DNA of 64,000 bases from IMG/VR virus record IMGVR_UViG_3300032334_002567, positions 310,001-374,000 of that record; one strand, written 5' to 3'. This document shows, piece after piece, positions 673 to 14,154 of the stretch. The notes beneath the pieces were generated by a model that was not told the origin of the DNA, ran no database searches, and saw only the letters and a program-made list of their open reading frames with translations. How positions within the stretch are numbered: the first letter of the stretch is position 1; each line of letters opens with the position of its first letter. Made by a program: the position numbers and the translations under genes.

Positions 673-747
673 GTTCCGATGGTGCCAACGCATTCGCTAG
701 GTGTTGGGCTTGGGTAAATGGTTGCCTTCTCAACCAGCCAACGGAAC
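673..747 (+). ncRNA. Putative three-way-junction RNA / structured 5' leader
   Basis: P1 673-683/737-747, P2 685-691/701-707, P3 719-724/731-736; begins 7 nt after the repeat core. Confidence 0.55.
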
Positions 748-777
748 ACTGATCTTAACCCCAACGGAGATAACCAA

Positions 778-1035: not shown

Positions 1036-1088
1036 ATAAAAATTGTACCCTATAAAGTTGTCCTTCTAACCCCCAACGGAGCTAACTT

Positions 1089-1400: not shown

Positions 1401-1440
1401 TTTGTACCCTAACTCTAACTCTACTCCCAAAGGATTATCT

Positions 1441-1902
1441 ATGACAGTTCACGATAAGATGTGCACACCTAGTGGCTTACAGGAATTGGCAAAAGAATGG
1501 TGGGACTGTCTTGTCTCTGATGAGCTAGCTTTGAGCCTAAGTACAGCTTATATAAAAGCAACTGAAGGATTCGAACCTGAAGCGGGCTCGTTCTCTGTTC
1601 CTTGTCTATGCTCCTCCGGCACAGGCCAGATTGTTTGGTTGAAAAACAGAATCAATGATTTGAATCTATTGCCCGTAGGCGAAGCACGAATGCACGACGA
1701 TATCCCAGCTGTTACAACAGCTGTATTGCATGTAGGTTTTTTGTCTGTGTTCGAAACAGAAGAAATGGTTTGCCGATTACGCAACGAGCCTCTACGTCAA
1801 AATTGTGAAAACCCAGCAAGGTCGAAGATGTTTGCGACAGCTCAAAAGCAGGATGTGGCTCCGATAGATCGTACTGCGTCAATCGTTTCTAGATCAAATT
1901 GA
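1441..1902 (+). CDS. Hypothetical protein
   Basis: AAGGA RBS then ATG 1441 after the repeat at 1400. Confidence 0.65.
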   Translation: MTVHDKMCTPSGLQELAKEWWDCLVSDELALSLSTAYIKATEGFEPEAGSFSVPCLCSSGTGQIVWLKNRINDLNLLPVGEARMHDDIPAVTTAVLHVGFLSVFETEEMVCRLRNEPLRQNCENPARSKMFATAQKQDVAPIDRTASIVSRSN

Positions 1903-2096
1903 TTTGGGAGTATCAAATGTCAATGAAAGTTTCTGAACTATCTGATTGGATCAAAACTCTTGAAAAAGATGATGTAGTCTGGATAGATGAGGGTGGACTA
2001 AACCTAGAAACTAAGGATGGAGCCTATCTGGAACTAGGCGGCAAAGTAGAGTTCTACGACGAAGATGATGACCCAAAAGGATTCTGGAGTAAATAA
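1899..2096 (+). CDS. Hypothetical protein
   Basis: Overlaps the upstream stop; start could be ATG 1917. Confidence 0.55.
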   Translation: MIWEYQMSMKVSELSDWIKTLEKDDVVWIDEGGLNLETKDGAYLELGGKVEFYDEDDDPKGFWSK

Positions 2097-2098
2097 CA

Positions 2099-2257
2099 AT
2101 GACTAAGCCTTACTTGGTGATCAAAAACAACTGCGCCATTGGTGTTGTTTTTGCTGGGAGTGAAACCGATGCACTCGTTATCGCTTGTGAAGCATATTGC
2201 GATGGCGTGACTGTAGAGTTGAGCCGTCAAAGTGGTCTAAGATCAGTAGGAGTATAA
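2099..2257 (+). CDS. Small hypothetical protein (52 aa)
   Basis: ATG 2099 to TAA 2257 fills the gap between adjacent genes. Confidence 0.5.
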   Translation: MTKPYLVIKNNCAIGVVFAGSETDALVIACEAYCDGVTVELSRQSGLRSVGV

Positions 2258-2260
2258 CCT

Positions 2261-2566
2261 ATGGAATGGATTAGTTTTTTCGGGCCACGTCGTCCAATCA
2301 ACGGACAAAAGATTTTCTATTACGGTGAGTGCATCGGTGTTTGGAGCGGAAATTACAGCTTAGACTGGAATGATCCAGTTAGCCCCCATCGGATAATTTG
2401 TGGGGAAAAAAGCAATGATGAAGTCTTAGCCGAATATGGTTTGAACAATCTGACTATGATTGTAGACCGTATGGATGCACCGTGGTGGATGCCTGACGAG
2501 GGACAGGAAAAGCCCAAAAAGCCAGAAACCGACTACCCAAAGGATTATCCAAGTCGAGAGGGCTAA
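2261..2566 (+). CDS. Hypothetical protein
   Basis: AGGAG RBS; ORF track. Confidence 0.7.
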   Translation: MEWISFFGPRRPINGQKIFYYGECIGVWSGNYSLDWNDPVSPHRIICGEKSNDEVLAEYGLNNLTMIVDRMDAPWWMPDEGQEKPKKPETDYPKDYPSREG

Positions 2567-2654
2567 ATAAAACCATTGTACCCTAAAAGGTCGTTACCCC
2601 ATTTGCACTTGAACGACTAATTCCTAAAATCTAAAATATAAGGGGAGAATAAAA

Positions 2655-2855
2655 ATGCAAAAGTTTATTTTTACAAACGTGAAGATCGAATACTTTGATT
2701 GTGAATGCTGCAAAGGTATGAAACCACCAGCAACCACAGTTTCAGAAGGGCCATTTGAGATAATGGCTCCAATTGGCATCAAACCAGAAAACATCGTAAA
2801 TGAGTTTTTTGGCGAGCCGGGACGAGTCATTGATTTCGAATGTCAAATTACCTAA
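2655..2855 (+). CDS. Hypothetical protein
   Basis: GGGGAG RBS; ORF track. Confidence 0.65.
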   Translation: MQKFIFTNVKIEYFDCECCKGMKPPATTVSEGPFEIMAPIGIKPENIVNEFFGEPGRVIDFECQIT

Positions 2856-2878
2856 TTCATCATTATTGACATTCAAGC

Positions 2879-2912
2879 AGACCCTTGAGATAAATCTCAG
2901 GGGTCTATTTTT
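2879..2912 (+). terminator. Rho-independent terminator
   Basis: AGACCCTTGAGA-TAAA-TCTCAGGGGTCT followed by a T-rich tract. Confidence 0.75.
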
Positions 2913-2935
2913 ATTTGTACCCTAAGGAGAATATC

Positions 2936-3229
2936 ATGTACAAACTATTTATCGATGATGTTCGTGACGCCCCGGATAGCCTCTGGACGGTGTGCAGATC
3001 ATCACATCAGGCTATTGAGCATATCAAGATTTATGGTATGCCAGCCCTTATCAGCTTTGACCATGACTTGGGCGGAGAAGACACCACCATGCTTTTCCTC
3101 CGTAGACTTGTGAACGAGCTTTGGGACGGTAAAACACCACCACCCAATTACAGAGTTCATTCTGCGAATCCTGTTGGCAGCGAAAATATCAAAAGCTTTA
3201 TGGAGAGTTGGAAAAAGTCGATTGAATAA
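2936..3229 (+). CDS. Cyclic-phosphate-processing receiver (cREC-type) domain protein
   Basis: KLFIDDVR, ISFDHDLG and VHSANPVG motifs. Confidence 0.8.
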   Translation: MYKLFIDDVRDAPDSLWTVCRSSHQAIEHIKIYGMPALISFDHDLGGEDTTMLFLRRLVNELWDGKTPPPNYRVHSANPVGSENIKSFMESWKKSIE

Positions 3230-3338
3230 ACTCTAAGGAGAGAGAAATGTCTAAGTTGACTCTTGGCGATAAGATTCTTTTCACTGCGTGTTTTATTGCT
3301 GGCTGTTTTGTTGTTTATCTAATCAACTAAGGAATAAA

Positions 3339-3605
3339 ATGACTGAGCTTTTTACCGACATTGCTATTGTTGTTATGTATCTTGGAACTGCTTTGGCGCT
3401 TTGTGCATTTGTTGGAATTGTTCTTCGGGTTGGTGATTTGGGATTTTGGTGCTTTGGGAAACTTGACGAATATCTGCAAGATAGGCATTTTGAGAAGCTC
3501 AGGAAGTCTTGGGAAAAGAATTGTACCCTAAAAGATTGTTCTAAACCCCAACGGAGTTCTTATGTCAATTCATATAACCAACTTTGTTCGACGCCAGACT
3601 GCTGA
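3339..3605 (+). CDS. Hypothetical membrane protein whose 3' end reads through the repeat at 3519
   Basis: N-terminal hydrophobic helix; AAGGA RBS. Confidence 0.55.
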   Translation: MTELFTDIAIVVMYLGTALALCAFVGIVLRVGDLGFWCFGKLDEYLQDRHFEKLRKSWEKNCTLKDCSKPQRSSYVNSYNQLCSTPDC

Positions 3606-4119
3606 AAGCCATTTCTCGCATTGGACGATCAGTGACGAGGAACTTATCTTTTGTGTTAGCCAGAACATGGACAGGGCTCATAAGGGATACCGGGATGGAG
3701 TTATTCTTGTCCCGATTAGTCCCGAAGGCTTTTTCAGTGCTGTGGCTGAATTGCAGATCAATGACACTCTGAATGGTTCTTTTTCTTGCCGTCGAGCTGG
3801 CGAGGAACCACGAAAAAGTGTCTTTATGATTGGTGAGAAGGTTCCCGCCCAAACAGTCTGGGTTGTTTTATACGCTCATCACGTTCTTGCTGAAAAGAAT
3901 GAAAACGAGAGCGATGCCGATTATGAAATTGTGAGCATCAACACCAGTCCTAGTGTTGATCAAAAGCCTGCTCCTATGCCGCCGGAAACGCTTATTGCTA
4001 ATCACTTTGAGCTTTCTGGGGGAACTGCAACAAATATGACCGATAGCGAGTTTGTTGCATCGCTGCGTGAAAGTGTGATGTATTGGAAAGATAAAGTTCA
4101 GGTTCAGCCTAACCTCTAA
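3562..4119 (+). CDS. DUF3228-family protein
   Basis: GYRDGVILVP, RRAGEEPR, VVLY.HHVL.E.NE, YEIVSIN and PM.PET....GGT motifs. Confidence 0.75.
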   Translation: MSIHITNFVRRQTAESHFSHWTISDEELIFCVSQNMDRAHKGYRDGVILVPISPEGFFSAVAELQINDTLNGSFSCRRAGEEPRKSVFMIGEKVPAQTVWVVLYAHHVLAEKNENESDADYEIVSINTSPSVDQKPAPMPPETLIANHFELSGGTATNMTDSEFVASLRESVMYWKDKVQVQPNL

Positions 4120-4128
4120 AGGAATAAC

Positions 4129-4401
4129 ATGAGAAGCACAACATTGCCTCTTTTTGAAAAGTGGTACGCAACAGCAACACCAGAGCAAATTGAGTTTGTT
4201 GATCAGGTTTATGCTATTTGTGAAGAAAACTACGAAAAGGGTGGAGATAGAATTGTTGAGTGCTATGGGCCAGAGGAAATCATCGAAGATTTCAATACAA
4301 TAGCTGAAGTTCGAGAGCACTGCAATTTGATGGTTGAGCAAGAGCTAAATGCCCGTTGGGGCGAAGATGATGACCCAGAGTTGAGTCGTGGCAAGTGGTG
4401 A
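4129..4401 (+). CDS. Hypothetical acidic protein
   Basis: AAAGGA RBS; ORF track. Confidence 0.75.
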   Translation: MRSTTLPLFEKWYATATPEQIEFVDQVYAICEENYEKGGDRIVECYGPEEIIEDFNTIAEVREHCNLMVEQELNARWGEDDDPELSRGKW

Positions 4402-4459
4402 GTTCTAAATAAATTGTACCCTAACAGGTTGTTCCGAATCACCCCTAACGGAGACAATC

Positions 4460-5023
4460 ATGTCTTACGAGAACGCTCCCCAGACGATTATGCTGGCGAC
4501 CAATTGCTGCTGCTGTGGTCGTCCGCTTTGCGATGCCATCTCTGTTGAGCTTGGTATCGGCCCGGAGTGCCGTGGTGGAAACAACGGTACTCTGACCGAG
4601 GAGCAGCGGCGTGAGTGCAACCAGCTTACACATGCTGCTGCCCTTGCGGCTCAGGAAGGAAAGATCGAAAACGTCCGATGGTGTTCGGAAGCTATTCGTG
4701 AGCTTGGCTTGCCAGAGCTTGCGGATAAGGTGGCTCACCGCTTTGTGAATGCAGAGCGGACGGCGAAGATCACCATTCGGATGGAGGACGGTATGCTCCT
4801 CGTCACTACGCCTTACAAGCGTTCGATGAAGGATGAGTTTACCGCCGCTTGGCGTAATGTCCCCGGTCGGCGGTGGGTTAGCCGGAAGCGGTGCAATGCG
4901 GTGCCTGTGAGCAGCAAGCCCCACTTGTGGGCTTTGCTCAAGCGGTTCTTCCCCGGCGAGTTCGGCATGGGCCCGAATGGGGTGTTCAGGGTTCCTGCCG
5001 AAAGCAAGAACGCCGCCGCATAG
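4460..5023 (+). CDS. DUF6011-like Zn-finger protein, C-terminus ...KNAAA
   Basis: C..CGRPL.D.IS.ELGIGPEC motif. Confidence 0.75.
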   Translation: MSYENAPQTIMLATNCCCCGRPLCDAISVELGIGPECRGGNNGTLTEEQRRECNQLTHAAALAAQEGKIENVRWCSEAIRELGLPELADKVAHRFVNAERTAKITIRMEDGMLLVTTPYKRSMKDEFTAAWRNVPGRRWVSRKRCNAVPVSSKPHLWALLKRFFPGEFGMGPNGVFRVPAESKNAAA

Positions 5024-5027
5024 CATC

Positions 5028-5068
5028 CAAACGGGGCGGGAGTGAAAATAATCCTCCCGCCCCGTTTG
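5028..5068 (+). repeat. GC hairpin (GGGGCGGG family), no U-tract
   Basis: 15-bp perfect stem CAAACGGGGCGGGAG/CTCCCGCCCCGTTTG. Confidence 0.8.
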
Positions 5069-5107
5069 TGATAAGTGATAAATCCCTTTACTCTTCTTTT
5101 GTGAATA

Positions 5108-5281
5108 ATGGAAAATATAAATTCTGTAGATACGATCAAAGAAATTGCAAGCCGTTTTTCTTGTATTCCCTTGAATGATATGACTTTTGCCGAAAAGGAC
5201 GTAGCAAATCTTTTGCTTGAAAAAGGATTTCTAACAATCGGTATAGATCATTGCGGTAAAAGAGTTTTTCATACTCTATAA
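5108..5281 (+). CDS. Small AT-rich hypothetical protein (57 aa)
   Basis: ATG 5108 to TAA 5281, ending just before a repeat copy. Confidence 0.5.
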   Translation: MENINSVDTIKEIASRFSCIPLNDMTFAEKDVANLLLEKGFLTIGIDHCGKRVFHTL

Positions 5282-5329
5282 AATAATTGTACCCTAGAAA
5301 GTTGTTCGATCCCACTCAAAGGAGTTGAC

Positions 5330-5455
5330 ATGGATCCCAACTACGACTTCTTTCTGGACTTCACGCAGGACTTGCAGAACGACGCAGAGTATAACGCTTG
5401 GCTCGACGAGCAGGAGCTTTACTCGCAACAGCAGGAAATGCCCGAAGACTTCTAA
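5330..5455 (+). CDS. Small acidic protein (41 aa)
   Basis: AAAGGAG RBS after the repeat at 5285. Confidence 0.65.
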   Translation: MDPNYDFFLDFTQDLQNDAEYNAWLDEQELYSQQQEMPEDF

Positions 5456-5615
5456 TTTCCTTCTAACCAACGGAGCTTTACCAGTGGTGTAAATACGAGG
5501 TTTTGGCGACAAGAGCCTCATCCAAGTCGCCCTAGGGCAGTCAGGCCACTGTCCTAGATTGTTTTTATTGTACCCTAGTAAGTTGTTCAATCCCAACCAT
5601 CAACCGGAGCTAACC

Positions 5616-5771
5616 ATGACCAGCTTTCTTCTGACTGTGAGCAGCTTTCTCGTTTCTGCCGCCCAAACGCCCTATCTGGACGGCTACTTTGCTGGTGCTG
5701 TGGCTATCGCCGTAACGATTGCGGTGAATGCTATTGTCATTGACTGCATCTACCGCTTCGGTACAAAGTAA
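5616..5771 (+). CDS. Small membrane protein
   Basis: CCGGAG RBS; hydrophobic segment; stop overlaps the next repeat. Confidence 0.65.
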   Translation: MTSFLLTVSSFLVSAAQTPYLDGYFAGAVAIAVTIAVNAIVIDCIYRFGTK

Positions 5772-5819
5772 TTTGTACCCTATAGAAGTGTTCAATCCTA
5801 ACCCCAACGGAGTTTCACG

Positions 5820-6164
5820 ATGAAGTGCATTAGCAATACTTTGGTGATTACTGCCGATATTTGGGAAGATCCGGGTGACTACCCTAATTCCCTTGCCGGT
5901 GGCCCGCTTCCCAGCCACTCTTACATTGAATCCAGCGGTGAACTGGTGCTGGAAGCTGAGAATAACGAGGAACTCGAAAGTTTCGACGCCCTAAACGATT
6001 GGTTCTCTGACTGGATTCATTGTGGTGCAGAGGCCAGCACTATAGGTGCATACGTTGATGTCCCCAGTTATTGGCATATTGACTGGGAGTTCAAAGTGGA
6101 GGGAAACATTCTCACCGTGACGGTCGGTGATGATTGTGAAGCTAACGAGCCAGATTATGATTAA
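5820..6164 (+). CDS. Hypothetical acidic protein
   Basis: Repeat module upstream; stop overlaps the next repeat. Confidence 0.8.
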   Translation: MKCISNTLVITADIWEDPGDYPNSLAGGPLPSHSYIESSGELVLEAENNEELESFDALNDWFSDWIHCGAEASTIGAYVDVPSYWHIDWEFKVEGNILTVTVGDDCEANEPDYD

Positions 6165-6211
6165 TTGTACCCTAACAGGTTGTTCTGATTTCCTCTAAAA
6201 CGGAGAGACAA

Positions 6212-6370
6212 ATGAACTGTTGGAAAAAGGCGTGGAATTGCTGCCTCAAAAACAAGGGCAGTGCAAAGGGCCGCAAAGAACTCAAGCGGGCCAACCATCG
6301 TGCCAACCGCCGTGTCGGTAAGAAGCTGGATAATGTTCACATTCGTCTGAACGGCTGGGACGTTATCTAA
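6212..6370 (+). CDS. Small basic protein (52 aa, MNCWKKAW...)
   Basis: CGGAG RBS; stop abuts the repeat at 6371. Confidence 0.7.
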   Translation: MNCWKKAWNCCLKNKGSAKGRKELKRANHRANRRVGKKLDNVHIRLNGWDVI

Positions 6371-6413
6371 AATTGTACCCTAACAAGTTGTTCGATCCTC
6401 ACCCCAACGGAGA

Positions 6414-6728
6414 ATGACCATGGCAATGTGCGAAGACTTCCCTTGTTGCGGACACGAGCCGGGATGCTGCCCCCGGTTCGATGAGAGCGGTCGGCAGTTG
6501 GATATGGTCTGCACTTGCGGTGCCAGACTGCCGGTTCACAATCGGTACAGTATTTGCGACCGTTGCCTTCGCATGGACGAAGACGGTTGCTATGACGACG
6601 ATTGTGAAACCTACGATGACGATGACTGCGAGGAAGACGACTGTGACGATGCCGATTGCGGTATCGAAGATCAGTTCCTCGACAGTTTCATGGAAGACCG
6701 CCTCAGTGGCGGCTTTTGTGAAGAATGA
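6414..6728 (+). CDS. Cys-rich (Zn-binding?) protein with acidic tail
   Basis: CEDFPCCGH, CTCG and C..C motifs. Confidence 0.75.
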   Translation: MTMAMCEDFPCCGHEPGCCPRFDESGRQLDMVCTCGARLPVHNRYSICDRCLRMDEDGCYDDDCETYDDDDCEEDDCDDADCGIEDQFLDSFMEDRLSGGFCEE

Positions 6729-6781
6729 AACACGGTTGCCGGGGCGGGTTGAGACTAACTCCCCGCCCCGGCCCGTTGGGG
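6729..6781 (+). repeat. AACACGG-GC hairpin-CCGTTGGGG element (copy A)
   Basis: Near-identical to the elements at 9689 and 11937. Confidence 0.85.
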
Positions 6782-6803
6782 CTTTCAAACAAGGAGACAA
6801 GTA

Positions 6804-7019
6804 ATGTCTGTATATTTCAACAAGCAAATGGCTAATCTTATCAACGTCTATGTCAAGTGTCCTACCAGTGGTCGAACGCTGGACGCAGATAGGCACGATG
6901 ACAAAGTATTGTGCAACTGCCCAGAGGCTATGAGCCGGGGCGGTACCCATATTGTTTCAAAGTGTGAACCGTCAACGGTCGAACAGTTCATGGTAGAAAA
7001 CAATTTTACAGAGAACTAA
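6804..7019 (+). CDS. Small Cys-containing hypothetical protein
   Basis: AGGAG RBS; ORF track. Confidence 0.7.
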   Translation: MSVYFNKQMANLINVYVKCPTSGRTLDADRHDDKVLCNCPEAMSRGGTHIVSKCEPSTVEQFMVENNFTEN

Positions 7020-7028
7020 AACCCACCT

Positions 7029-7066
7029 TAGGGTACAAATAAAGTAATTAAAATAATTGTACCCTA
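7029..7066. repeat. Inverted pair TAGGGTACAA-N18-TTGTACCCTA
   Basis: Direct reading of the sequence. Confidence 0.9.
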
Positions 7067-7102
7067 GAAAAGTGTTCGATAACCCCCAACGGAGAATCCC
7101 TC

Positions 7103-7333
7103 ATGCCAGTCGAAGTTCACACCAGCGGTTCTGTTTCTTATACCGGTGAAGACGGCGTAGCTCTTTTCCGTCTCATTACTCTTCACTCTGCCCTGCGCCT
7201 TCAGGCCACCACCGGCATGAAAGCGTCAAGGATCAGTGCTGTGGCTTGTGCCAAGCGACTTGGCTATACAGGCCGCACCGCAAAGGCTCTGCTTGCAGAC
7301 ATCGAACGGAAGCACCCTGAGCTGAAGAAGTAA
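7103..7333 (+). CDS. Hypothetical protein
   Basis: Repeat module upstream; stop overlaps the next repeat. Confidence 0.8.
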   Translation: MPVEVHTSGSVSYTGEDGVALFRLITLHSALRLQATTGMKASRISAVACAKRLGYTGRTAKALLADIERKHPELKK

Positions 7334-7378
7334 ATTGTACCCTAGTTAATCGTTCGACACCCCCAACAAGAGGATGCA

Positions 7379-7582
7379 ATGAGTAACATCGAAGACAAGA
7401 TGGAAGCAATCGAAAAGTGGCGCAATGACAATTTGTGCTTTCTCGACGGCCAGCCTGCAAAGATTGTGGGTTGGAAAGAAAAGTTTCCAATCGTGAGCCA
7501 AATCGACGGCCCTCTTGCTTTTGAGTGGTCGTGGGCCGCTGTCAACAGGATCATGTCCGGTGATCGACAGTTCAAGAGCTAG
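7379..7582 (+). CDS. Hypothetical protein
   Basis: Repeat module and GAGGA RBS. Confidence 0.8.
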   Translation: MSNIEDKMEAIEKWRNDNLCFLDGQPAKIVGWKEKFPIVSQIDGPLAFEWSWAAVNRIMSGDRQFKS

Positions 7583-7624
7583 ATCATTTGTACCCTATTA
7601 AAGCGTTCAACACCCCAACGGAGA

Positions 7625-7957
7625 ATGATCATGGAATACACCGAAGCCCTCAAAGTTCTTGGCAAGCGTGATTCGAAGAAAGTCGGAAACAACACCTACA
7701 TGATCCGGCTGGGTTCGGACATCGGTATTCGACTTCACAACACCGTTGTGGTGACCATCCATCCCGACAATACCTACACACTCAATAGCGGTGGATGGCA
7801 GACAGTGACAACAAAGGATCGGATCAACCAGTATTCACCGGTTCGTGTGTATCAATCAAAAAGCGTTTGGTATGTCGGTCAAGGCGAGCTGTTTTACGAC
7901 AACATGAAAGTCGGTGTCGTTTGCGGTGAGCCGCTAGCTTTAGGAATTGTACCCTAG
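7625..7957 (+). CDS. Hypothetical phage protein (TLNSGGW.T.TTK.RIN motif); stop TAG lies inside the repeat
   Basis: Repeat module upstream; 3' end reads GGAATTGTACCCTAG. Confidence 0.8.
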   Translation: MIMEYTEALKVLGKRDSKKVGNNTYMIRLGSDIGIRLHNTVVVTIHPDNTYTLNSGGWQTVTTKDRINQYSPVRVYQSKSVWYVGQGELFYDNMKVGVVCGEPLALGIVP

Positions 7958-7996
7958 TAGGTTGTGTAACCACCCCCAACGGAGTTGTGAAAAAAC

Positions 7997-8278
7997 ATGA
8001 TGAACTACAGCGGTTGTAACAGCTGGATCTACATCTACGCCATCGGTGGCAATTGGAACCCCGGCCCCAGCGGTGACGAGTTCGTGGGCTGTGCCTACGA
8101 CGCCTCCACTGCCCTCAGCCTGCTCGACTTGGTCGAGTTGAAGGGTGGCTATGCCGTCAGCCTGCACGGTGACAACCTGCATACGCTCAATGCCGTCAGC
8201 GGCGAGTGTGGTGTGCGGGAAGCCCGTATCATGTTCAAGCTCTGGAAAGAGAAAGAGGCGGTCGTTGTCGCTGGGTAA
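7997..8278 (+). CDS. Hypothetical protein
   Basis: Repeat module upstream. Confidence 0.75.
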   Translation: MMNYSGCNSWIYIYAIGGNWNPGPSGDEFVGCAYDASTALSLLDLVELKGGYAVSLHGDNLHTLNAVSGECGVREARIMFKLWKEKEAVVVAG

Positions 8279-8331
8279 CAATAAATAAATTGTACCCTAA
8301 AAGAGTGTTCGATCCCAACGGAGAAGCGATC

Positions 8332-8475
8332 ATGGAAATTAAATTCAACTTCAAAACACGTCAGTACGACGTTTGCATCACATTCTTCGACGGCAGAACC
8401 CCCATAAATGTTTGCTCTTTCTACAAAGAGTCGGATGCTCGCGCCTACGTCATGGTTCACAATGTCAAGTGTTAG
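8332..8475 (+). CDS. Small hypothetical protein (47 aa)
   Basis: CCAACGGAGAAGCGATCATG leader. Confidence 0.7.
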   Translation: MEIKFNFKTRQYDVCITFFDGRTPINVCSFYKESDARAYVMVHNVKC

Positions 8476-8534
8476 ATTCAATAAATAAATTGTACCCTGA
8501 CAGAGTGTTCGATCCACCCCAACGGAGTTTTGAA

Positions 8535-8687
8535 ATGACCGAAAACGAAATCAATGTTCTGGAAGAGGCCGCATCGCACATTCGAAACGATGCTTACAAC
8601 TGCGATAGCAGTCTGGATCGCAAGTATTTCGAAAAGCTTGCCGATAAGATCGAAGACATTATCGCCAAGCATAATCAAAGCAAATAA
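8535..8687 (+). CDS. Small hypothetical protein (50 aa)
   Basis: Repeat module upstream; stop overlaps the next repeat. Confidence 0.7.
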   Translation: MTENEINVLEEAASHIRNDAYNCDSSLDRKYFEKLADKIEDIIAKHNQSK

Positions 8688-8736
8688 ATTGTACCCTAGA
8701 TGATTGTTCGATTCACACCCCAACGGAGAAGCGATC

Positions 8737-9117
8737 ATGGCAAGCTGGTACACCGTCAGCGAGAGCAAGATTCAGTGGGCTCCCATCGGCACCCGTGTTC
8801 TGAAGACTGGCGAGACTAAGCCGAAGTTTTCCCGGATCGGCGTCCGTATCAATATGGTGGACGGTAGCTGGTGGTTCCACAGCTTCAAGCACGATAGCTG
8901 GACGCAACACTATCCCCGGAAGCAGGCCACCGACAAGCTGGGACGGCCCATTTTCGAGGATGGTCAGCCGCTCCTGCGACCGGAACGCAAGGAAACCTAC
9001 CGCAACTGGATGGCGGTTGTGAGAGAGTTCGGCACTCGACTGCCCGCTCTGGTTGTCGCTCTGGAAAACGGTCACGCCGAAGCTCTGCTAGCCGAAGCAG
9101 AGAAAACGGCAGCGTAA
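8737..9117 (+). CDS. Hypothetical protein, C-terminus ...EKTAA
   Basis: Leader CCAACGGAGAAGCGATCATGG, shared with the gene at 8332. Confidence 0.8.
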   Translation: MASWYTVSESKIQWAPIGTRVLKTGETKPKFSRIGVRINMVDGSWWFHSFKHDSWTQHYPRKQATDKLGRPIFEDGQPLLRPERKETYRNWMAVVREFGTRLPALVVALENGHAEALLAEAEKTAA

Positions 9118-9190
9118 AACGTGTGCTAGGGGCGGCAAGGCTCTACGGCCAAAAGCCGCGAAACTGCTAGCCGCCCCTAGCCCGTTGGGG
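9118..9190 (+). repeat. GC hairpin-CCGTTGGGG element (divergent copy D)
   Basis: GCTAGGGGCGGC ... GCCGCCCCTAGC stem, then CCGTTGGGG. Confidence 0.75.
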
Positions 9191-9253
9191 TACTTATAAA
9201 TAATTGTACCCTAAAAGTGTGTTGCGAACGCCCCTCTTTTTCAAGGATGAAAA

Positions 9254-9424
9254 ATGTACGCTCTGACGATGATCATAGGTTTTCTTGGCTACGGGTTCGG
9301 GTACGAGGGTTGTGAAAAAGGAAAGATATATTTCGGCGTGTATACCCCCAAAGCCGAATATGGTTGGGTCATGACAGAAAAAGACGTTTATCTGGATACC
9401 GTGTACCAGAAAACTTCTAAATAA
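9254..9424 (+). CDS. Small hypothetical protein (56 aa)
   Basis: AAGGA RBS; stop overlaps the next repeat. Confidence 0.6.
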   Translation: MYALTMIIGFLGYGFGYEGCEKGKIYFGVYTPKAEYGWVMTEKDVYLDTVYQKTSK

Positions 9425-9465
9425 ATTGTACCCTAGTTGATTGTTCGATCCAACCCCAACGGAGA

Positions 9466-9690
9466 ATGACAATGCCAAATATCAACTGGTTCGACGGTCA
9501 GAATGCGGTTGGCAAGTACGTTATGGAACTCATGTACGACGACGGTAGCGTCAGCTACATGAAAAATGAGAACTACGAGCAGATTTGCCACTACTACCGG
9601 CTTGCTTTGGAAATGTCGGAAGTGGTGGGTGCGACCATCTACAACCCAAAGTGGCAAGTAGTTTGCTCGACAGCACGGGCCGCAGCGTGA
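9466..9690 (+). CDS. Hypothetical protein, C-terminus ...ARAAA
   Basis: Repeat module upstream. Confidence 0.8.
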   Translation: MTMPNINWFDGQNAVGKYVMELMYDDGSVSYMKNENYEQICHYYRLALEMSEVVGATIYNPKWQVVCSTARAAA

Positions 9691-9770
9691 ACACGGTTGC
9701 CTGGGCGGGTTGAGACAAAACTCCCCGCCCTGGCCTGTTAGGGTATTTATATTGTACCCTATAGAAGTGT
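9678..9770 (+). repeat. About 90-bp linker (Ala-Ala-Ala-stop, hairpin, repeat core), near-identical to 11926..12024
   Basis: GGCCGCAGCGTGAACACGGTTGCC(T/G)GGGCGGGT...TTTATATTGTACCCTATAGAAGTGT in both copies. Confidence 0.9.
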
Positions 9771-9796
9771 CAGCCACCCCAAACACAGGAGCCAAT

Positions 9797-9958
9797 ATGA
9801 GCAATAACGAAAAACCGTACTGCTTCGAAGAAGCCCGTTTCAAGCGTGAAATGGAATACGTGGCTCGTAAGCTCAAAGAGGCGTTGGAACTCAAGGAATA
9901 CGCCAAACAACTGGCAAAAGAAAAAGAACAAAAAGAGAAAGAGGAAAGCCGGGACTAA
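9797..9958 (+). CDS. Small charged coiled-coil protein
   Basis: AGGAG RBS after the repeat at 9750. Confidence 0.7.
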   Translation: MSNNEKPYCFEEARFKREMEYVARKLKEALELKEYAKQLAKEKEQKEKEESRD

Positions 9959-9987
9959 CACCCCCGGTTCTCTTTTTTAGTCGGCCA

Positions 9988-10033
9988 TAGGGTACAAATA
10001 AAATAAAAAGGGATATACAATAATTGTACCCTA
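9988..10033. repeat. Inverted pair TAGGGTACAA-N26-TTGTACCCTA
   Basis: Direct reading of the sequence. Confidence 0.9.
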
Positions 10034-10040
10034 TAACAGT

Positions 10041-10155
10041 GTGAATGATTGCGAGGCCGCACCATCGGCACTACTGTCCGGTTGCAAACGGCAGTAACTC
10101 GCGGGAGCGGTATGCCGAAAGGCAGCGAGTGGTGCACCCCATCGCAATCGTTCAC
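10041..10155 (+). ncRNA. Structured ncRNA (~115 nt) occupying its own unit of the array
   Basis: 14-bp closing stem 10041-10054/10142-10155; GCACCA/TGGTGC; hairpin 10072-10096; CTCGC/GCGAG; TGCC-GAAA-GGCA; no RBS or ORF between two repeat copies. Confidence 0.75.
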
Positions 10156-10209
10156 AACAAAACAATTGTACCCTAGAAAAGTGTTCGATTCACCCCAACG
10201 GAGACGATC

Positions 10210-10545
10210 ATGACTTTCGTCAACCTGACCCCGCACACGATCACTGTGGTTCTCGACAATACCAGCGTGCAATTCCCGGCTTCTGGCAACGTGGCCCGTG
10301 TTTCCACCAGTCGAGTCTCTGGCCCCACGCTAACCGTCTACGGCGATTCTGTCGGTATCCAGACTTCCCGTGTCGAGTTCGGGGCAGTCGAGGGGCTTCC
10401 CGATCCCGTGGACGGCACGGTTTACATTGTGAGCGGAATGGTCGCAGCCCGTGTCAACCGGCCCGACGTTTTCGCTCCCGGTGAACTGGTGCGTGATGCA
10501 AACGGCCAGCCCACCGGCTGCAAGGGTCTGACTTGCAGCGGTTGA
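10210..10545 (+). CDS. Hypothetical phage protein (VNLTPH.I N-terminus)
   Basis: Repeat module upstream; N-terminal motif I recall from phage hypothetical proteins. Confidence 0.8.
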   Translation: MTFVNLTPHTITVVLDNTSVQFPASGNVARVSTSRVSGPTLTVYGDSVGIQTSRVEFGAVEGLPDPVDGTVYIVSGMVAARVNRPDVFAPGELVRDANGQPTGCKGLTCSG

Positions 10546-10602
10546 TTATTATAATTGTACCCTATAGAAGTGTTCGATCCCAACCCCAACGGAGACTCAC
10601 GA

Positions 10603-11043
10603 ATGAACGACATTCTTCTCGCCGCCCTGACCAGCTGCTTCAGCAAGATGGCAAAGGCCGCTGGCCCGATTGCCCCCGGCCTGCACCAGGTCGATGAAAC
10701 GATCACGATGCGGGTCAAGGGCGAGGTGCTGAAGTCGGACGACGAAACCTACGTCCCGACGATTGCGATTCCCGTCAAGGCCGTGATGGCTACGTTGCTC
10801 CCCCGGTTGGGTGCGACACGGGAGGCTGCGATGGAAACGCTTATCGCCGCCATGACTGAAGCGGTCAATCTGGACAAGCTGGGCGATGAAACGCTCAAAG
10901 CCCGGATGAAAGACGTTGACGCGGCTTTCGAGCATGTGCAGAACGTGCTCGACGCCCTCCCGCCAAAGACACGGACGGGAAAGACGAACGTGGACGTGAC
11001 CCTTGTGGTCGCTCCCACGCCCGCCGTCGCACTTGTCCCGTGA
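10603..11043 (+). CDS. Hypothetical protein
   Basis: CCCCAACGGAG then ATG 10603. Confidence 0.8.
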   Translation: MNDILLAALTSCFSKMAKAAGPIAPGLHQVDETITMRVKGEVLKSDDETYVPTIAIPVKAVMATLLPRLGATREAAMETLIAAMTEAVNLDKLGDETLKARMKDVDAAFEHVQNVLDALPPKTRTGKTNVDVTLVVAPTPAVALVP

Positions 11044-11045
11044 CG

Positions 11046-11098
11046 ATACGGCATCGGGGGCGGGAGGAACTAACAACTCCCGCCCCCACTAGCCGTTT
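11046..11098 (+). repeat. GC hairpin (GGGGCGGGAG/CTCCCGCCCC; copy E)
   Basis: Same stem family as 5028 and 6729. Confidence 0.75.
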
Positions 11099-11152
11099 GT
11101 GCAATTGTACCCTATTGGTTTGTGTGATTCGTCCCTTTACTTTGGAGCAGTT

Positions 11153-11335
11153 ATGGAAGCGAAAATCGAGAACGGCTTTCTGGTTCTGCGAGTCCCGATG
11201 AATGCAACGCCGATTCGTTCGTCTACCGGCAAGACTTTGGTGGTTGCCTCGACCTATGGCAACAAGGCAACCGAAGTGACGGTGGACGGCAAGACGGTCA
11301 CCGTGGGCGTCAACGCCTATATCAAGGCCGCTTGA
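11153..11335 (+). CDS. Small conserved beta-rich protein (S.TGKTLVVAST.GN), C-terminus ...YIKAA
   Basis: GGAG RBS; ATG 11153. Confidence 0.8.
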   Translation: MEAKIENGFLVLRVPMNATPIRSSTGKTLVVASTYGNKATEVTVDGKTVTVGVNAYIKAA

Positions 11336-11356
11336 CCCCAACGGTTCGGATCGAAA

Positions 11357-11393
11357 GCCGGAGGGGACAGCCACCCCCTCCGGTTCTTTTTTT
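11357..11393 (+). terminator. Rho-independent terminator, repeated at 12470
   Basis: CCGGAGGGG-ACAGCCAC-CCCCTCCGG followed by TTCTTTTTTT. Confidence 0.85.
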
Positions 11394-11402
11394 AGCCCGC
11401 CA

Positions 11403-11439
11403 TAGGGTACAAATAAATATATAAAATAATTGTACCCTA
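11403..11439. repeat. Inverted pair TAGGGTACAA-N17-TTGTACCCTA
   Basis: Direct reading of the sequence. Confidence 0.9.
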
Positions 11440-11482
11440 GATAAGTGTTCGATCTAACCTTCCCTCTCACTTGGAGTCAACG

Positions 11483-11551
11483 ATGATCGCTCTCGTTCTC
11501 GCGTTTGGCCTTGGTTTCGCCGCCATTTCTGCCGTTTACTGGGTGCTGTAA
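11483..11551 (+). CDS. 22-aa single-helix membrane peptide (MIALVLAFGLGFAAISAVYWVL)
   Basis: TTGGAG RBS inside its own repeat-bounded unit. Confidence 0.55.
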   Translation: MIALVLAFGLGFAAISAVYWVL

Positions 11552-11644
11552 AGCTCCCAGTCTAACACCTGAGTGATTAGGGTATAAAGTAATTGTACCC
11601 TAGATAAGTGTTCGATCCGATCCCACCCCAACCGGAGACGCACG

Positions 11645-11938
11645 ATGAAGAACGCTTTCGACCGCACGAACAGCATGAAGAACAAGCTCAAGGCCGATTG
11701 GAACCGGATGGTGGGGGAACTGGTGTCCATCCCCGCCGGTTGCCAGATTCACAGCCTGACGCTCACGCAGACCAACTTCGGTTGGGTCTACGCCCGGAAG
11801 CACGGCCAGCCCGTGCCGGTCGCCCAGTTGCGGAACGCCGCCGTGACGAAGGGTTACTGTATCCTGCACGACGGCCCCAACTTCCGGGTGGCCCTCCCGC
11901 CGAAGCGGAACGGGGAGCCGGTCAAGGCCGCAGCGTGA
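11645..11938 (+). CDS. Hypothetical protein, C-terminus ...VKAAA
   Basis: Repeat module upstream. Confidence 0.8.
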   Translation: MKNAFDRTNSMKNKLKADWNRMVGELVSIPAGCQIHSLTLTQTNFGWVYARKHGQPVPVAQLRNAAVTKGYCILHDGPNFRVALPPKRNGEPVKAAA

Positions 11939-12024
11939 ACACGGTTGCCGGGGCGGGTCGAGACTAACTCCCCGCCCCGGCCCCGTTGGGGTACTTGTAT
12001 TTATATTGTACCCTATAGAAGTGT
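11926..12024 (+). repeat. Linker copy C (Ala-Ala-Ala-stop, hairpin, repeat core)
   Basis: Near-identical to 9678..9770. Confidence 0.9.
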
Positions 12025-12054
12025 TCGATCCCCACCCCCAACCGGAGCCGCCCC

Positions 12055-12444
12055 ATGTTGAATGAAGCGTTCTTTCAGGTGTGCAACGATGCCGTCCCCG
12101 CAAAGTCCAGCTACGTCTCGCTCTACGTCAACGTGCCGTACTACGGTGGGCCGGAGGAAGGTGGATGGTGGGGCAGTGACACCGCACTAGTCGCTCACTA
12201 CAAGTGTGACAGCCAGCCCCATGCCGAAGCTGTGAAGGCCCGTGTCGAGGAGCTGGCCCAGCAGTTGAGCGACGATGCCCGCCGGTCGTTTGGTCAAGCC
12301 TGCAAGGCCCAGTGTGAATGGCTGGACGCACGTGGGTTGGACGCCGACTACCTGCCCGAAGTGGACGGGGAGGAAACCTACTGGGTCGCCGTCGAGGATC
12401 GCCCCGGTGAACACGCCAGCCAAGGGTGCAGGCACTACGAATAA
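12055..12444 (+). CDS. Hypothetical phage protein (YGGPEEGGWW motif)
   Basis: Repeat module upstream; stop abuts the next repeat. Confidence 0.8.
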   Translation: MLNEAFFQVCNDAVPAKSSYVSLYVNVPYYGGPEEGGWWGSDTALVAHYKCDSQPHAEAVKARVEELAQQLSDDARRSFGQACKAQCEWLDARGLDADYLPEVDGEETYWVAVEDRPGEHASQGCRHYE

Positions 12445-12469
12445 AATTGTACCCTATCAAGCACACCGA

Positions 12470-12504
12470 CCGGAGGGGACAGCCAACCCTCCGGCTTTCT
12501 TTTC
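12470..12504 (+). terminator. Rho-independent terminator, paralogue of 11357
   Basis: CCGGAGGG-GACAGCCAA-CCCTCCGG followed by CTTTCTTTT. Confidence 0.8.
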
Positions 12505-12513
12505 AGCCCGCCA

Positions 12514-12552
12514 TTGGGTACAAATAAAGTAATACATAATAATTGTACCCTA
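12514..12552. repeat. Inverted pair TTGGGTACAA-N19-TTGTACCCTA
   Basis: Direct reading of the sequence. Confidence 0.85.
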
Positions 12553-12699
12553 GTAATATACAGGAGGGTATTACAAAGATAATAATACAGAAATAAAAAG
12601 CGAAAACCTTTTAAAAAAATTGTACCCTAGGTACCCTCCCCCCCGCAATTACTGTCTTATTTTTTAAGTCGTCCTGACTTTTTTTCCCGTATTAGCACC

Positions 12700-12768
12700 G
12701 TTGCAAAATCCCGGTTACAAACGTTGCAAAATCCCGGTTACAAACGTTGCAAAATACCAGTTACAAAA
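12700..12768 (+). repeat. Three tandem 23-bp repeats GTTGCAAAAT(C/A)CC(G/A)GTTACAAA(C/A)
   Basis: Copies start at 12700, 12723 and 12746. Confidence 0.9.
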
Positions 12769-13182
12769 TTTTGGCCCTAGTAATTCTTTATTTTCTCCAT
12801 ATGGGCTTAAGATTTTAATATTGATGACATCTTTAAAAAATCCAGCCAAAAAATTCCATAAAATTCTATTACAAATTTTGGCCCCAACAATTCTTCGTTC
12901 TATGCCGTATAAATAAATTAGGCAAAATGGAGTGCCTCTAAAAAAATGCGGCACGAAATTTTTAACGAAGGAGTGTTATGGATTATTATTCTATAAGTGG
13001 ATTGGCAGTAATTACATCAATTATTTGGTTGTTTTGCTATTGTGTAAAAATAACAATGGACAATAACGAATAGACCCCCTAGACAAAACCTACTCTTCTG
13101 GTAAGATGTCCCGTAAGGAGATCACAAAGAAGTTCTCTAGGAGAAAAAATGAAAGTCAAAAGCAGGTAGTGTTCTTACTAAA

Positions 13183-13595: not shown

Positions 13596-13611
13596 CATAT
13601 ATAAAATTGTT

Positions 13612-14154
13612 ATGTTATTTTTTAGAAGTTTTATTTGTTTTAGGTTAAATGGGAAAATAAATTCAAAAACAGTTAGTGAATTTGAAGAAATACTTTCAAA
13701 TTGTTTAAAAACAAAACAAAATATACTTCCTATAGTAATAAACTCAACAGGAGGTTGTGCTTATTCTTTAGTATCTTTATATGAAAAAATTAAAAAATCA
13801 AAAATAAAAGTAGCAACAATAGTTGAGCACAAAGCATTATCAGCAGCGGCATTTCTTCTGTCTTGTGGCAATCAAGGATACAGATATATGGCCAAAGAAG
13901 CAGTTGTTATGATACATGATGCACATTCAGCGGATTTAAAACCAGACTTAAAAGAAATAGAAAGAATTAATAGCGTATTATACAACATATTAGAAAACAA
14001 CTCTAATAAAAAAAACAACTTTTTTAAGAACATAATGCAAGACAATAAATGTTCAGATCTATATCTAAATGCTGAACAATGTCTCAAATATAAAATTATT
14101 GATTTTATTGGAATTCCTATAATTAAATCAATAATAGAAAAAGAATATTCATAG
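13612..14154 (+). CDS. clpP: ClpP-like protease subunit
   Basis: INSTGG, KALSAAAFLLSCG (catalytic Ser) and VMIHD (His) motifs; DLYLNAEQCLKY.IID tail. Confidence 0.85.
   Translation: MLFFRSFICFRLNGKINSKTVSEFEEILSNCLKTKQNILPIVINSTGGCAYSLVSLYEKIKKSKIKVATIVEHKALSAAAFLLSCGNQGYRYMAKEAVVMIHDAHSADLKPDLKEIERINSVLYNILENNSNKKNNFFKNIMQDNKCSDLYLNAEQCLKYKIIDFIGIPIIKSIIEKEYS

What the first reader, a model, noticed from the sequence alone, without database searches (positions are those of the whole stretch)
12530..13180. Sharp compositional boundary with 23-bp tandem repeats at the end of the array
Seen: GC falls from 40/60 in line 12241 to 13/60 in line 13621. The gene-free gap holds the last two cores (the final one followed by a second GTACCCT), three 23-bp direct repeats at 12700-12768 and recurring AAAATTTT/TTACAAA tracts. 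Established: T5-like phages end their first-injected pre-early region with a repeat-rich stop signal, and origins often carry iterons. Inference: an injection-stop, terminal-repeat boundary or origin separating a host-like-GC early region from the AT-rich core genome.
Basis: partly seen in the sequence, partly recalled or inferred. Interest (0 to 1): 0.6.

Follow-up and report, generated by a model that had tools for sequence, protein, structure and literature searches.

The report
Far end of huge-phage gene-cassette array
The sharp GC drop and the 23-bp repeats are real. They mark the downstream end of a 50-kb array of 72 small gene cassettes in a 381-kb freshwater phage, each cassette led by the same 10-base promoter-like signal, and not a demonstrated injection stop, genome end or replication origin.

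Summary
GC falls from 59-71% to 29-41% per 100 bp at window 12,500. Three ORF-less TTGTACCCTA cores lie at 12447, 12543 and 12620, and a unique 3 x 23-bp tandem lies at 12699-12767.

The window belongs to a 381,443-bp jumbo phage. The core occurs 72 times on one strand over genome 272,015-322,629, each copy 20-50 nt before a ribosome-binding site and start codon.

Leader conservation and GC both rise towards this boundary, and cassettes get shorter. Freshwater relatives carry the same core with shuffled, partly different cassettes. One relative (L019) has the same boundary design but no 23-bp tandem.

A 595-kb relative (LR756511.1) has an analogous array with a different core (GCTGTACT). It shows the same gradient and the same kind of end: terminator, inverted core, ORF-less core.

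No integrase, serine recombinase or reverse transcriptase was found. There is no DnaA box and no GC-skew turn at the boundary.

Best reading: this is the distal insulator and anchor of a promoter-led hyperplastic array that shuffles as PeSLs do in T4-like phages. It may also be the point where the array grows. Injection-stop, terminal-repeat and origin readings are unsupported but not excluded. An assembly chimera is rejected.

The parts
1..12444 (+). Window part of the cassette array. The whole array is genome 272,015-322,629 and holds 72 cores. In the window, 33 + strand cores TTGTACCCT(A/G) each precede an RBS and start codon of a small ORF. From about 3521 onward the 26-nt leader after the core is also conserved.
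12055..12444 (+). Last ORF-bearing cassette (129 aa, GC3 0.74). It matches phrog_24642 and is 50-53% aa identical to hypothetical proteins of Mycobacterium and Gordonia phages.
12447..12456 (+). ORF-less core 1, a promoter-like core followed directly by a terminator.
12470..12504 (+). Intrinsic-terminator-like hairpin (8-bp G+C stem, 12470-12477 with 12487-12494, -17.3 kcal/mol) plus a T-rich tail. The hairpin is conserved in L019.
12511..12525 (-). Inverted core variant (CCATTGGGTACAAAT). Its exact reverse complement occurs only once more in the genome, 24 nt before the first core of the array (genome 271,989-272,003).
12543..12552 (+). ORF-less core 2, followed by an AT-rich 67-nt spacer that holds ATTACAAAGATAATAA. 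That motif is conserved in L019.
12620..12637 (+). ORF-less core 3, overlapped by a second GTACCCT. GTACCCTAGGTAC (12622-12634) is a palindrome, and a C7 run follows.
12645..12689 (+). Block conserved with relative L019: GCAATTACTGTCTTATTTTTTA ... TTTTTTTCCCG. TTTTTCCCGT occurs only three times in the genome, and the other two copies are at the left array boundary.
12699..12767 (.). Three tandem 23-bp units, which amount to six GTT(A/G)CAAA boxes spaced alternately 14 and 9 nt (about one helical turn). The unit is unique in the genome, absent as a tandem in L019, and has no significant RNA fold (z +0.33).
12766..12895 (+). Two copies of a 23-nt direct repeat AAATTTTGGCCC..AATTCTT (12766-12788 and 12873-12895, 87% alike). 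AAATTTGGCCC is also present in L019.
12978..13073 (+). First ORF of the AT-rich side (31 aa, hydrophobic), preceded by GGAG. L019 also starts its AT-rich side with a small hydrophobic ORF.
13596..14154 (+). CATATATA motif, the class enriched upstream of core-genome genes and absent from the array, followed directly by a ClpP-like protease gene (13612-14154).

Best explanation
Window 12445-12977 is the fixed downstream terminus of a 50.6-kb, one-strand array in a 381-kb freshwater jumbo phage. In the array every small gene or short operon is led by the same 10-nt promoter-like core (AAAAnAA-TTGTACCCTA-nnAAnnTGT). In the last 9 kb each gene also has a shared 5' leader ending in GGAG and ATG.

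The terminus contains a strong terminator, an inverted core, three cores with no gene behind them, a roughly 45-nt block conserved in a relative, and a lineage-specific triplication that makes six helically phased GTTRCAAA boxes.

Inferred function, in three parts:
1. It stops and insulates array transcription from the AT-rich core genome, which uses a different upstream motif (CATATATA).
2. It provides the constant right-hand flank between which cassettes are gained, lost and shuffled by homologous recombination at the repeated cores and leaders. This is what PeSLs do in T4-like phages.
3. The phased boxes bind a protein or bend the DNA locally, as a regulatory add-on that is not essential.

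Shown: the anatomy, the compositional step, conservation of the design in two relatives, and cassette shuffling. Inferred: promoter activity of the core, the recombination mechanism, and the role of the 23-bp repeats.
For: Array and core:
- 72 + strand cores lie in genome 272,015-322,629. Only four + strand copies lie outside the array, and two of those sit upstream of genes.
- The information profile shows one 26-nt element with an A-rich upstream tract and no -35 element.
- Upstream stop codons overlap the A-tract, and an RBS plus ATG follow 20-50 nt downstream.
- Some cassettes end in terminator hairpins, so the next cassette needs its own promoter.

Composition and polarity:
- GC3 is 0.28 in core genes, 0.40 in the left array, 0.53 in the right array and 0.74 in the last cassette.
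- Spearman rho is 0.70 for position against leader score, 0.52 for GC and -0.54 for spacing.

Not a chimera:
- An identical IMG/VR fragment spans the boundary.
- Logan contigs of run X2 cover 12435-12728 and 12781-13273, and a contig of X6 covers 12062-12732 at about 94% identity.
- JGI contig L019 crosses an orthologous GC-rich to AT-rich boundary.

Shuffling:
- L014-L020 carry the same core, with cassettes 40-76% aa identical to ours but in a different order and mixed with unrelated ones.
- The X6 strain has a cassette absent from this genome right after the leader at 12051.

Conserved terminus design:
- L019 has the hairpin, inverted core, core, TTACAAA-ATAATAA, partial core, ATTACTGTCTT.TTTTTTA and TTTTTCCC.
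- LR756511.1 (595 kb; baseplate protein 46% aa identical) has a 46-copy GCTGTACT array. Its gradient is the same (rho 0.59 and 0.60). Its end is a terminator, an inverted core, an ORF-less core and a short tandem.
- In that phage the same core also precedes minus-strand genes elsewhere, as a promoter class would.

Other:
- A different motif class is found downstream of the boundary.
- No tyrosine or serine recombinase and no reverse transcriptase were found.
Against: - No transcript data exist, because no RNA run holds the locus. Promoter activity, start sites and termination are all unproven.
- The core matches no sigma-70 pattern. No phage RNA polymerase was detected (one search was uninformative). 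The enzyme that would read the core is therefore unknown. Three sigma-like genes are candidates only.
- The record is estimated to be 79% complete, so a recombinase could lie in the missing part.
- The 23-bp tandem has no assigned binder.
- Homologous recombination explains shuffling among relatives. It does not explain how foreign GC-rich ORFs became fused to the leader at a precise distance.
Confidence: 0.65

Rival explanations
1. Growing point of the array. New cassettes enter next to this boundary, and the ORF-less cores at 12447, 12543 and 12620 are the acceptor. Cassettes then age leftwards, losing leader identity and drifting towards the phage's low GC. This would be polar accretion like an integron attI site or a CRISPR leader end, but without a recognisable integrase. 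It is compatible with the best explanation and adds a mechanism to it.
For: - Polar gradients of leader identity, GC and cassette length appear independently in this phage and in the 595-kb relative.
- ORF-less or decayed cores sit at the distal end in all three arrays seen.
- The two terminal cassettes of L019 and the four terminal ones here have no homologue in each other, while cassettes just inside them are shared.
- The last cassette has the highest GC3 (0.74). It is still 75-80% identical in DNA over about 100 nt to actinophage genes.
Against: - Only three arrays were seen, and the relatives are fragments.
- Shuffling is also seen deep inside the array.
- No recombinase or reverse transcriptase was found.
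- The gradient could also come from a single block exchange of the distal 9 kb, or from stronger gene conversion there.
- Larger, clade-conserved genes in the left part suggest two kinds of region rather than one ageing series. One example is the RuvB-like ATPase, whose orthologue lies elsewhere in LR756511.1.
Confidence: 0.25
2. Injection-stop signal or edge of a long terminal repeat. The array is the first-injected, early-expressed DNA, and the repeats pause DNA entry or mark the edge of the repeat.
For: - The array looks like an early or host-takeover block: many small genes, each with its own promoter-like core.
- A repeat-rich, gene-free gap ends it.
- In LR756511.1 the array starts at base 700 of the record.
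Against: - The tandem is not conserved in L019.
- No DnaA boxes are present.
- The locus is 59 kb from the nearer contig end.
- IMG/VR finds no end repeats.
- Contigs cannot show termini or coverage steps.
- The phage is not T5-like.
Confidence: 0.08
3. Replication origin with iterons.
For: Three exact-phase direct repeats lie next to AT-rich DNA.
Against: - There is no GC-skew extremum here. The only local minimum lies near 262-270 kb, at the other end of the array.
- No initiator gene is adjacent.
- The repeats are absent in L019.
- In LR756511.1 the corresponding site is a point of convergent transcription.
Confidence: 0.05
4. Edge of a foreign mobile element or satellite inserted in the phage, bounded by the 15-bp inverted repeat.
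For: - Composition differs from the rest of the genome.
- A unique 15-bp inverted pair lies at the two ends.
- Both flanks are gene-poor.
Against: - No integrase or serine recombinase (resolvase) gene was found; transposase families were not searched.
- The same core drives genes elsewhere in the genome, and genome-wide in the 595-kb relative.
- The array holds phage tRNAs and clade-conserved genes.
- L019 does not use the same inverted-core variant specifically at its end.
Confidence: 0.04
5. Assembly chimera joining two genomes at a shared repeat.
For: The GC step is abrupt, and de Bruijn contigs break at 12730-12780.
Against: - Cores 2 and 3 lie inside the AT-rich side.
- Contigs from other samples and other studies span the GC step.
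- The break at 12730-12780 is what a 69-bp tandem does to 31-mer assembly.
Confidence: 0.02

Closest known systems
PeSLs (promoter-early stem-loops) of T4-like phages (Arbiol et al. 2010, PMC2839356; Comeau et al. 2014, PMC4122927)
   Same: - Small repeated regulatory units lie between ORFan genes of hyperplastic regions.
- The upstream stop codon sits in an AT-rich tract, followed by a promoter, then SD and the start of the next gene.
- Some units carry a stem-loop terminator.
- Relatives differ by insertions, deletions and replacements that break at the units.
   Different: - The core is not sigma-70-like.
- It is invariant over 9-10 nt.
- All copies lie on one strand in one 50-kb block of 72, rather than being scattered over several regions.
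- The cassettes are strongly GC-foreign.
- A polar gradient runs towards a defined terminus.
- Mini-circles were not tested.
Integron cassette arrays (IntI, attI, attC, Pc)
   Same: A one-way array of many small, unrelated, promiscuously shared ORFs. There are signs of polarity towards one end, and a constant flank lies next to the youngest-looking cassettes.
   Different: - No tyrosine recombinase was found.
- The repeat is a 5' promoter and leader, not a 3' attC.
- Every cassette has its own promoter-like core instead of sharing Pc.
T5 first-step-transfer region and injection stop signal (own knowledge)
   Same: A block of small, probably early genes ends in a repeat-rich non-coding stretch.
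   Different: - The locus is not at a shown genome end.
- No DnaA boxes are present.
- The repeats are not conserved in a relative.
- The phage is unrelated to T5.
SPO1 host-takeover module (own knowledge)
   Same: A dense run of small early genes, many with their own strong promoter and RBS, in a large phage that encodes its own sigma factors.
   Different: SPO1 early promoters are host sigma-A type, and its module lies in the terminal redundancy. Neither is shown here.
Phage-specific short promoters (T7, SP6 or Syn5 class; own knowledge)
   Same: One short, almost invariant element with an AT-rich upstream part, repeated many times.
   Different: No single-subunit RNA polymerase gene was detected. 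That search was uninformative, because its control gave no signal.

Membership tests
PeSL-type regulatory cassettes | Sigma-70-like -35 and -10 promoter in each unit | tested here: not met
   The information profile shows a single 26-nt element with no -35 or -10 pair. The consensus scan finds no such site at the cores.
PeSL-type regulatory cassettes | Upstream stop codon in an AT-rich tract, with SD and start codon at the 3' end of the unit | tested here: met
   gaps of 0-5 nt between the stop codon and the core are common, and GGAG lies 5-9 nt before the ATG.
PeSL-type regulatory cassettes | Stem-loop terminator or attenuator within the unit | tested here: inconclusive
   A minority of units have one (inverted core or G+C hairpin before the cores at 7057, 10024, 11430, 11593 and 12543). 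Most units have none.
PeSL-type regulatory cassettes | Units mark the break points of gene gain, loss and replacement between related phages | tested here: met
PeSL-type regulatory cassettes | Excised mini-circles | not testable with these tools
   Only contigs were available. One 'goes back' joint in X2 (10584 to 9419, 31 letters on the shorter side) is too weak to count.
Integron | IntI tyrosine recombinase next to the array | tested here: not met
   PF00589 is absent from the 381-kb record, while the control gave a signal in 14 of 14 genomes. The record is about 79% complete.
Integron | attC inverted-repeat site at the 3' end of each cassette | tested here: not met
   Only 5 inverted cores occur among 38 units in the window.
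Integron | Polar insertion at one end | tested here: inconclusive
   Gradients appear in two phages, but no insertion event was observed.
T5-type injection stop or terminal-repeat edge | Position at the inner edge of a terminal repeat or first-injected end | not testable with these tools
   The runs are held as contigs only, and IMG/VR reports no end repeats.
T5-type injection stop or terminal-repeat edge | Repeats and DnaA boxes conserved among relatives | tested here: not met
   No DnaA box, and the tandem is absent in L019.
Iteron origin | Three or more phased direct repeats next to AT-rich DNA | tested here: met
Iteron origin | Skew inflection, adjacent initiator gene, conservation in relatives | tested here: not met

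The most novel reading that the evidence does not exclude
Huge phages of this clade carry an integrase-free, polar gene-accretion array. Foreign ORFs are fitted with a standard promoter, leader and RBS, and are added at the distal end. The ORF-less cores at 12447-12629 would be the acceptor and the conserved block at 12645-12689 the anchor. Older cassettes move inward, lose the leader and drift to phage GC.
Probability: 0.25. Interest if true: 0.85.

Novelty: new variant of a known kind. Interest (0 to 1): 0.62.

Why it matters
Hyperplastic regions are where phages keep their fast-changing host-takeover and probably counter-defence genes. Here the region has an unusually clean grammar: one invariant core, a standard leader, a defined terminus and a polar gradient. 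That grammar recurs in a 381-kb and a 595-kb phage that use different cores.

This gives three things.
1. A ready handle for finding accessory genes in uncultured huge phages: scan for the clade's core.
2. A testable case of how phages capture and re-wire foreign genes without a site-specific recombinase.
3. A candidate non-canonical promoter class for phage-encoded sigma factors.

For the finding itself, the practical lesson is that a sharp GC step with repeats inside a phage genome need not be a terminus, an origin or a misassembly.

Tried and rejected
- L001 (IMG/VR) and L028 (Pontibacter): single in-gene matches to the core-leader pattern, taken as chance.
- The boundary block ATTACTGTCTTNTTTTTTA in IMG/VR gave 10 further hits. 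None has cores nearby, so they are chance.
- The ClpP-like and glycosyltransferase neighbours find only the same phage in IMG/VR. ClpP-like relatives at 60-76% identity lie on contigs that are short or lack an array, so they yielded no extra boundaries.
- Rfam gave only two sub-threshold miRNA-family hits in 11000-14000.
- RNA folding of the tandem is no better than shuffles.
- My test of cassette identity against flanks by global alignment was too noisy to use.
- L019 and L020 are not held as whole records, so the left end of that relative's array could not be read.
- The giant 4404-aa ORF and the genes behind the two extra-array cores gave no Pfam clue to the polymerase.
- Paper searches for the motif and for LR756511 found nothing relevant.
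- An early note placed the actinophage DNA hits on cassette 7103-7333. They belong to 12077-12204 in the last cassette, and this was corrected.
- Depth figures were not used, as the tool advises.

Full report
**1. What is at the coordinates**

- Line 12241 has 40 G+C of 60 and line 13621 has 13 of 60.
- In 100-bp steps, GC is 54-71% up to 12,500 and 29-41% from 12,501 on.
- Cores TTGTACCCTA lie at 12447, 12543 and 12620, with a second GTACCCT at 12631.
- Tandem Repeats Finder reports 12699-12767, period 23, three copies, score 124.
- The unit is unique in the genome, even allowing five mismatches.
- TTACAAA is locally enriched: five copies in 560 nt, against 95 in 381 kb. AAAATTTT occurs only once.

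**2. The context changes the question**

- The window is bases 310,001-374,000 of a single 381,443-bp contig at 36.5% GC.
- It is a jumbo tailed phage. It has baseplate wedge and tail proteins, a tRNA nucleotidyltransferase, a ClpP-like protease and sigma-70-like genes.
- The core TTGTACCCT occurs 72 times on the + strand between genome 272,015 and 322,629. Only four + strand copies lie elsewhere, and two of those sit in intergenic DNA upstream of genes.
- Each core lies 20-50 nt before an RBS and a start codon. The previous stop codon often overlaps the A-rich tract in front of the core.
- The information profile shows one 26-nt element, AAAAnAA-TTGTACCCTA-nnAAnnTGT, and no -35 box.

**3. The array is polar**

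- Along the array, similarity of the 26 nt after the core to the consensus leader (…GTGTTCGATCC..CCCCAACGGAG) rises from random level to about 15 of 26 in the last 9 kb (Spearman rho 0.70).
- GC rises (rho 0.52) and core-to-core spacing falls to about 280 nt (rho -0.54).
- GC3 is 0.28 in core-genome genes, 0.40 in the left array, 0.53 in the right array and 0.74 in the last cassette.
- The left part holds larger genes: AAA/MoxR ATPases, VWA proteins, a DUF2201 peptidase, an ATP-dependent ligase, UvdE, and five tRNAs.
- The right part holds short ORFs of unknown function. Some belong to families seen in cyanophages, Microcystis phages, Paenibacillus phages and actinophages.
- The last cassette (12055-12444) is 50-53% identical in protein to Mycobacterium and Gordonia phage genes. 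It is still 75-80% identical in DNA over about 100 nt.

**4. Not a misassembly**

- An IMG/VR fragment of the same phage is 100% identical across the boundary.
- Logan contigs from another sample of the same study cover 12435-12728 and 12781-13273.
- A lake metagenome from a different study has one contig covering 12062-12732 at about 94% identity.
- A third study holds 97-100% identical pieces on both sides.
- No unitig crosses 12730-12780. That is expected of a 69-bp tandem under 31-mer assembly.
- Two of the cores lie inside the AT-rich side.

**5. Relatives**

- A scan of JGI metagenome contigs for the core and leader found seven loci from at least three projects.
- All carry the same core at cassette spacing. 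Their ORFs are 40-76% identical to some of ours, but in a different order and mixed with unrelated ORFs.
- In the 94% strain, a cassette absent from this genome follows the leader at 12051.
- Contig L019 reaches an orthologous boundary. After two GC-rich cassettes (60-63% GC) with no homologue here, it has this sequence of elements:
  - the same hairpin;
  - an inverted core;
  - a core followed by TTACAAAAATAATAA;
  - a partial core after an A-run;
  - ATTACTGTCTTCTTTTTTA;
  - TTTTTCCC;
  - one GTTACAAAAAT;
  - then AT-rich DNA and a small hydrophobic ORF.
- The design is therefore conserved, but the 23-bp triplication is not.

**6. A deep relative with a different core**

- The closest phage record is LR756511.1, an uncultured 595,163-bp phage. 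Its baseplate protein is 46% identical.
- It has no TTGTACCCT at all.
- Bases 700-19,200 hold 46 + strand copies of TAAAGCTGTAC(T/A)AA. Each is followed by a leader (…ACCTCTAACGCAAAGGAG…) and a small ORF.
- GC there is 0.49-0.60, against 0.42 for the genome.
- The same polarity is present: leader rho 0.59 and GC rho 0.60.
- Its distal end is built in the same way:
  - a decayed last cassette;
  - a terminator hairpin;
  - an inverted core;
  - an AT spacer;
  - an ORF-less core;
  - about 250 nt of non-coding DNA with an 8-bp tandem;
  - then a two-way terminator facing convergent genes.
- The same core, in sense orientation, precedes minus-strand genes over the next 80 kb and sporadically beyond. 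That is how a promoter class behaves.
- The two arrays share almost no cassettes.

**7. What the boundary most likely does**

From left to right it contains:
- a core followed at once by an 8-bp G+C hairpin and a T-rich tail (-17.3 kcal/mol);
- an inverted core variant;
- two more cores with no ORF behind them;
- a block conserved in L019;
- six GTTRCAAA boxes spaced 14 and 9 nt apart;
- a second pair of 23-nt repeats;
- the first AT-rich ORF.

Downstream genes carry a different upstream motif, CATATATA. It occurs 29 times in the genome and never in the array, and the first copy after the boundary is at 13596, before the ClpP-like gene.

I read the region as three things. It is the terminator and insulator that closes one transcription regime. 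It is the constant flank of a recombination-prone array. It also carries a lineage-specific set of phased protein-binding or bending boxes.

The tandem has no RNA structure signal (z +0.33) and no Rfam match.

**8.

- Origin: cumulative GC skew has no turn here. The only local minimum is near 262-270 kb, at the other end of the array, where a 2.4-kb gene-poor, repeat-rich stretch lies. No initiator gene is adjacent.
- Injection stop: no DnaA boxes, and the repeats are not conserved.
- Terminal repeat: IMG/VR reports no end repeats, and the available runs are contigs, which cannot show termini.

None of the three is excluded by direct data. None is supported.

**9. Mechanism of cassette turnover**

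- No tyrosine recombinase, serine recombinase or reverse transcriptase was found. The controls gave signals. The record is estimated to be 79% complete.
- The nearest known mechanism is recombination between repeated promoter-terminator units (PeSLs) in T4-like phages (PMC2839356, PMC4122927).
- This array shares the unit layout and the break-point behaviour. It fails the sigma-70 promoter criterion and differs in scale, strandedness, composition and polarity.
- The polarity, seen twice independently, leaves open a more novel reading: cassettes are added at the distal end, with the ORF-less cores as acceptors.

**10. Limits**

- Promoter activity is inferred from position and conservation only. 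The polymerase or sigma factor that reads the core is unknown: Rpb1/Rpb2-type genes were not found, the T7-type search was uninformative, and three sigma-like genes are candidates.
- The host is unknown, so 'host-like GC' is untested.
- The 15-bp inverted pair that brackets the array is a single observation.

Noticed in passing
window 12511-12525 and genome 271,989-272,003 (outside the window): TTGTACCCAATGG occurs only twice in the 381-kb genome. One copy is on the + strand, 24 nt before the first core of the array. The other is on the - strand near the last cassette. Together they form a 15-bp perfect inverted repeat bracketing the array.
   Followed up: partly
L011 7600-10000 (genome 269,600-272,000): The left boundary of the array is a 2.4-kb gene-poor stretch with a 43-bp x 2.6 tandem (L011 8422-8534) and sigma-70-like TTGACA boxes. 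TTTTTCCCGT occurs three times in the genome: twice here and once at window 12681. A local minimum of cumulative GC skew lies just upstream (262-270 kb), so this end is the better origin or regulatory-hub candidate.
   Followed up: partly
window 656-1042 and 10024-10165; L014, L018, L019: Some cores are followed by no ORF but by sequence conserved in relatives. One example is GGTGCCAACGCATTCGCTAGGTGTTGGGC, found after the core at 656 and also in L014. Another non-coding cassette is shared by L018 and L019. These may be small RNAs. L019 3383 has a core followed by a tRNA-like 5' end.
   Followed up: no
window 564-648; genome 284,552-294,209: Five tRNA genes (Glu, Gln, Arg, Leu-taa, Leu-caa) lie inside the array. 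At least two of them follow directly after a cassette ORF rather than a core.
   Followed up: no
window 20421-21332 (-); genome 162,481 and 197,871: The phage has three sigma-70-like genes. One intergenic extra-array core (genome 198,762) lies about 370 nt downstream of the second sigma gene, after an intervening 89-aa ORF, and is followed by a 160-nt structured leader.
   Followed up: partly
window 38024-51238 (+): A 4404-aa ORF next to the tail and baseplate genes has no Pfam match.
   Followed up: partly
window 19654-20439: An ORF made largely of GGTGGN-type tandem repeats (periods 6, 12, 15 and 18), so glycine-rich. The contig itself starts and ends in similar simple repeats, so it probably broke inside such a gene.
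   Followed up: no
window 9419 and 10584 (run X2): One contig joins 10584 (inside a leader) back to 9419 (just before a core). A circular or tandem cassette junction would look like this. Only 31 letters lie on the shorter side, so it may be cross-mapping between leaders.
   Followed up: no
L040 (LR756511.1 1-20,000): The 595-kb uncultured phage has a 46-unit + strand array with core GCTGTACT at 0.7-19.2 kb. It is the only large + strand block in a genome otherwise transcribed on the - strand. The array begins 700 nt from the start of the record.
   Followed up: yes
window 13596 and genome-wide: CATATATA(A) is enriched within 100 nt upstream of core-genome genes (15 of 29 copies) and is absent from the array. 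It may be the promoter of another temporal class. TATAAATA lies at window 12908.
   Followed up: partly
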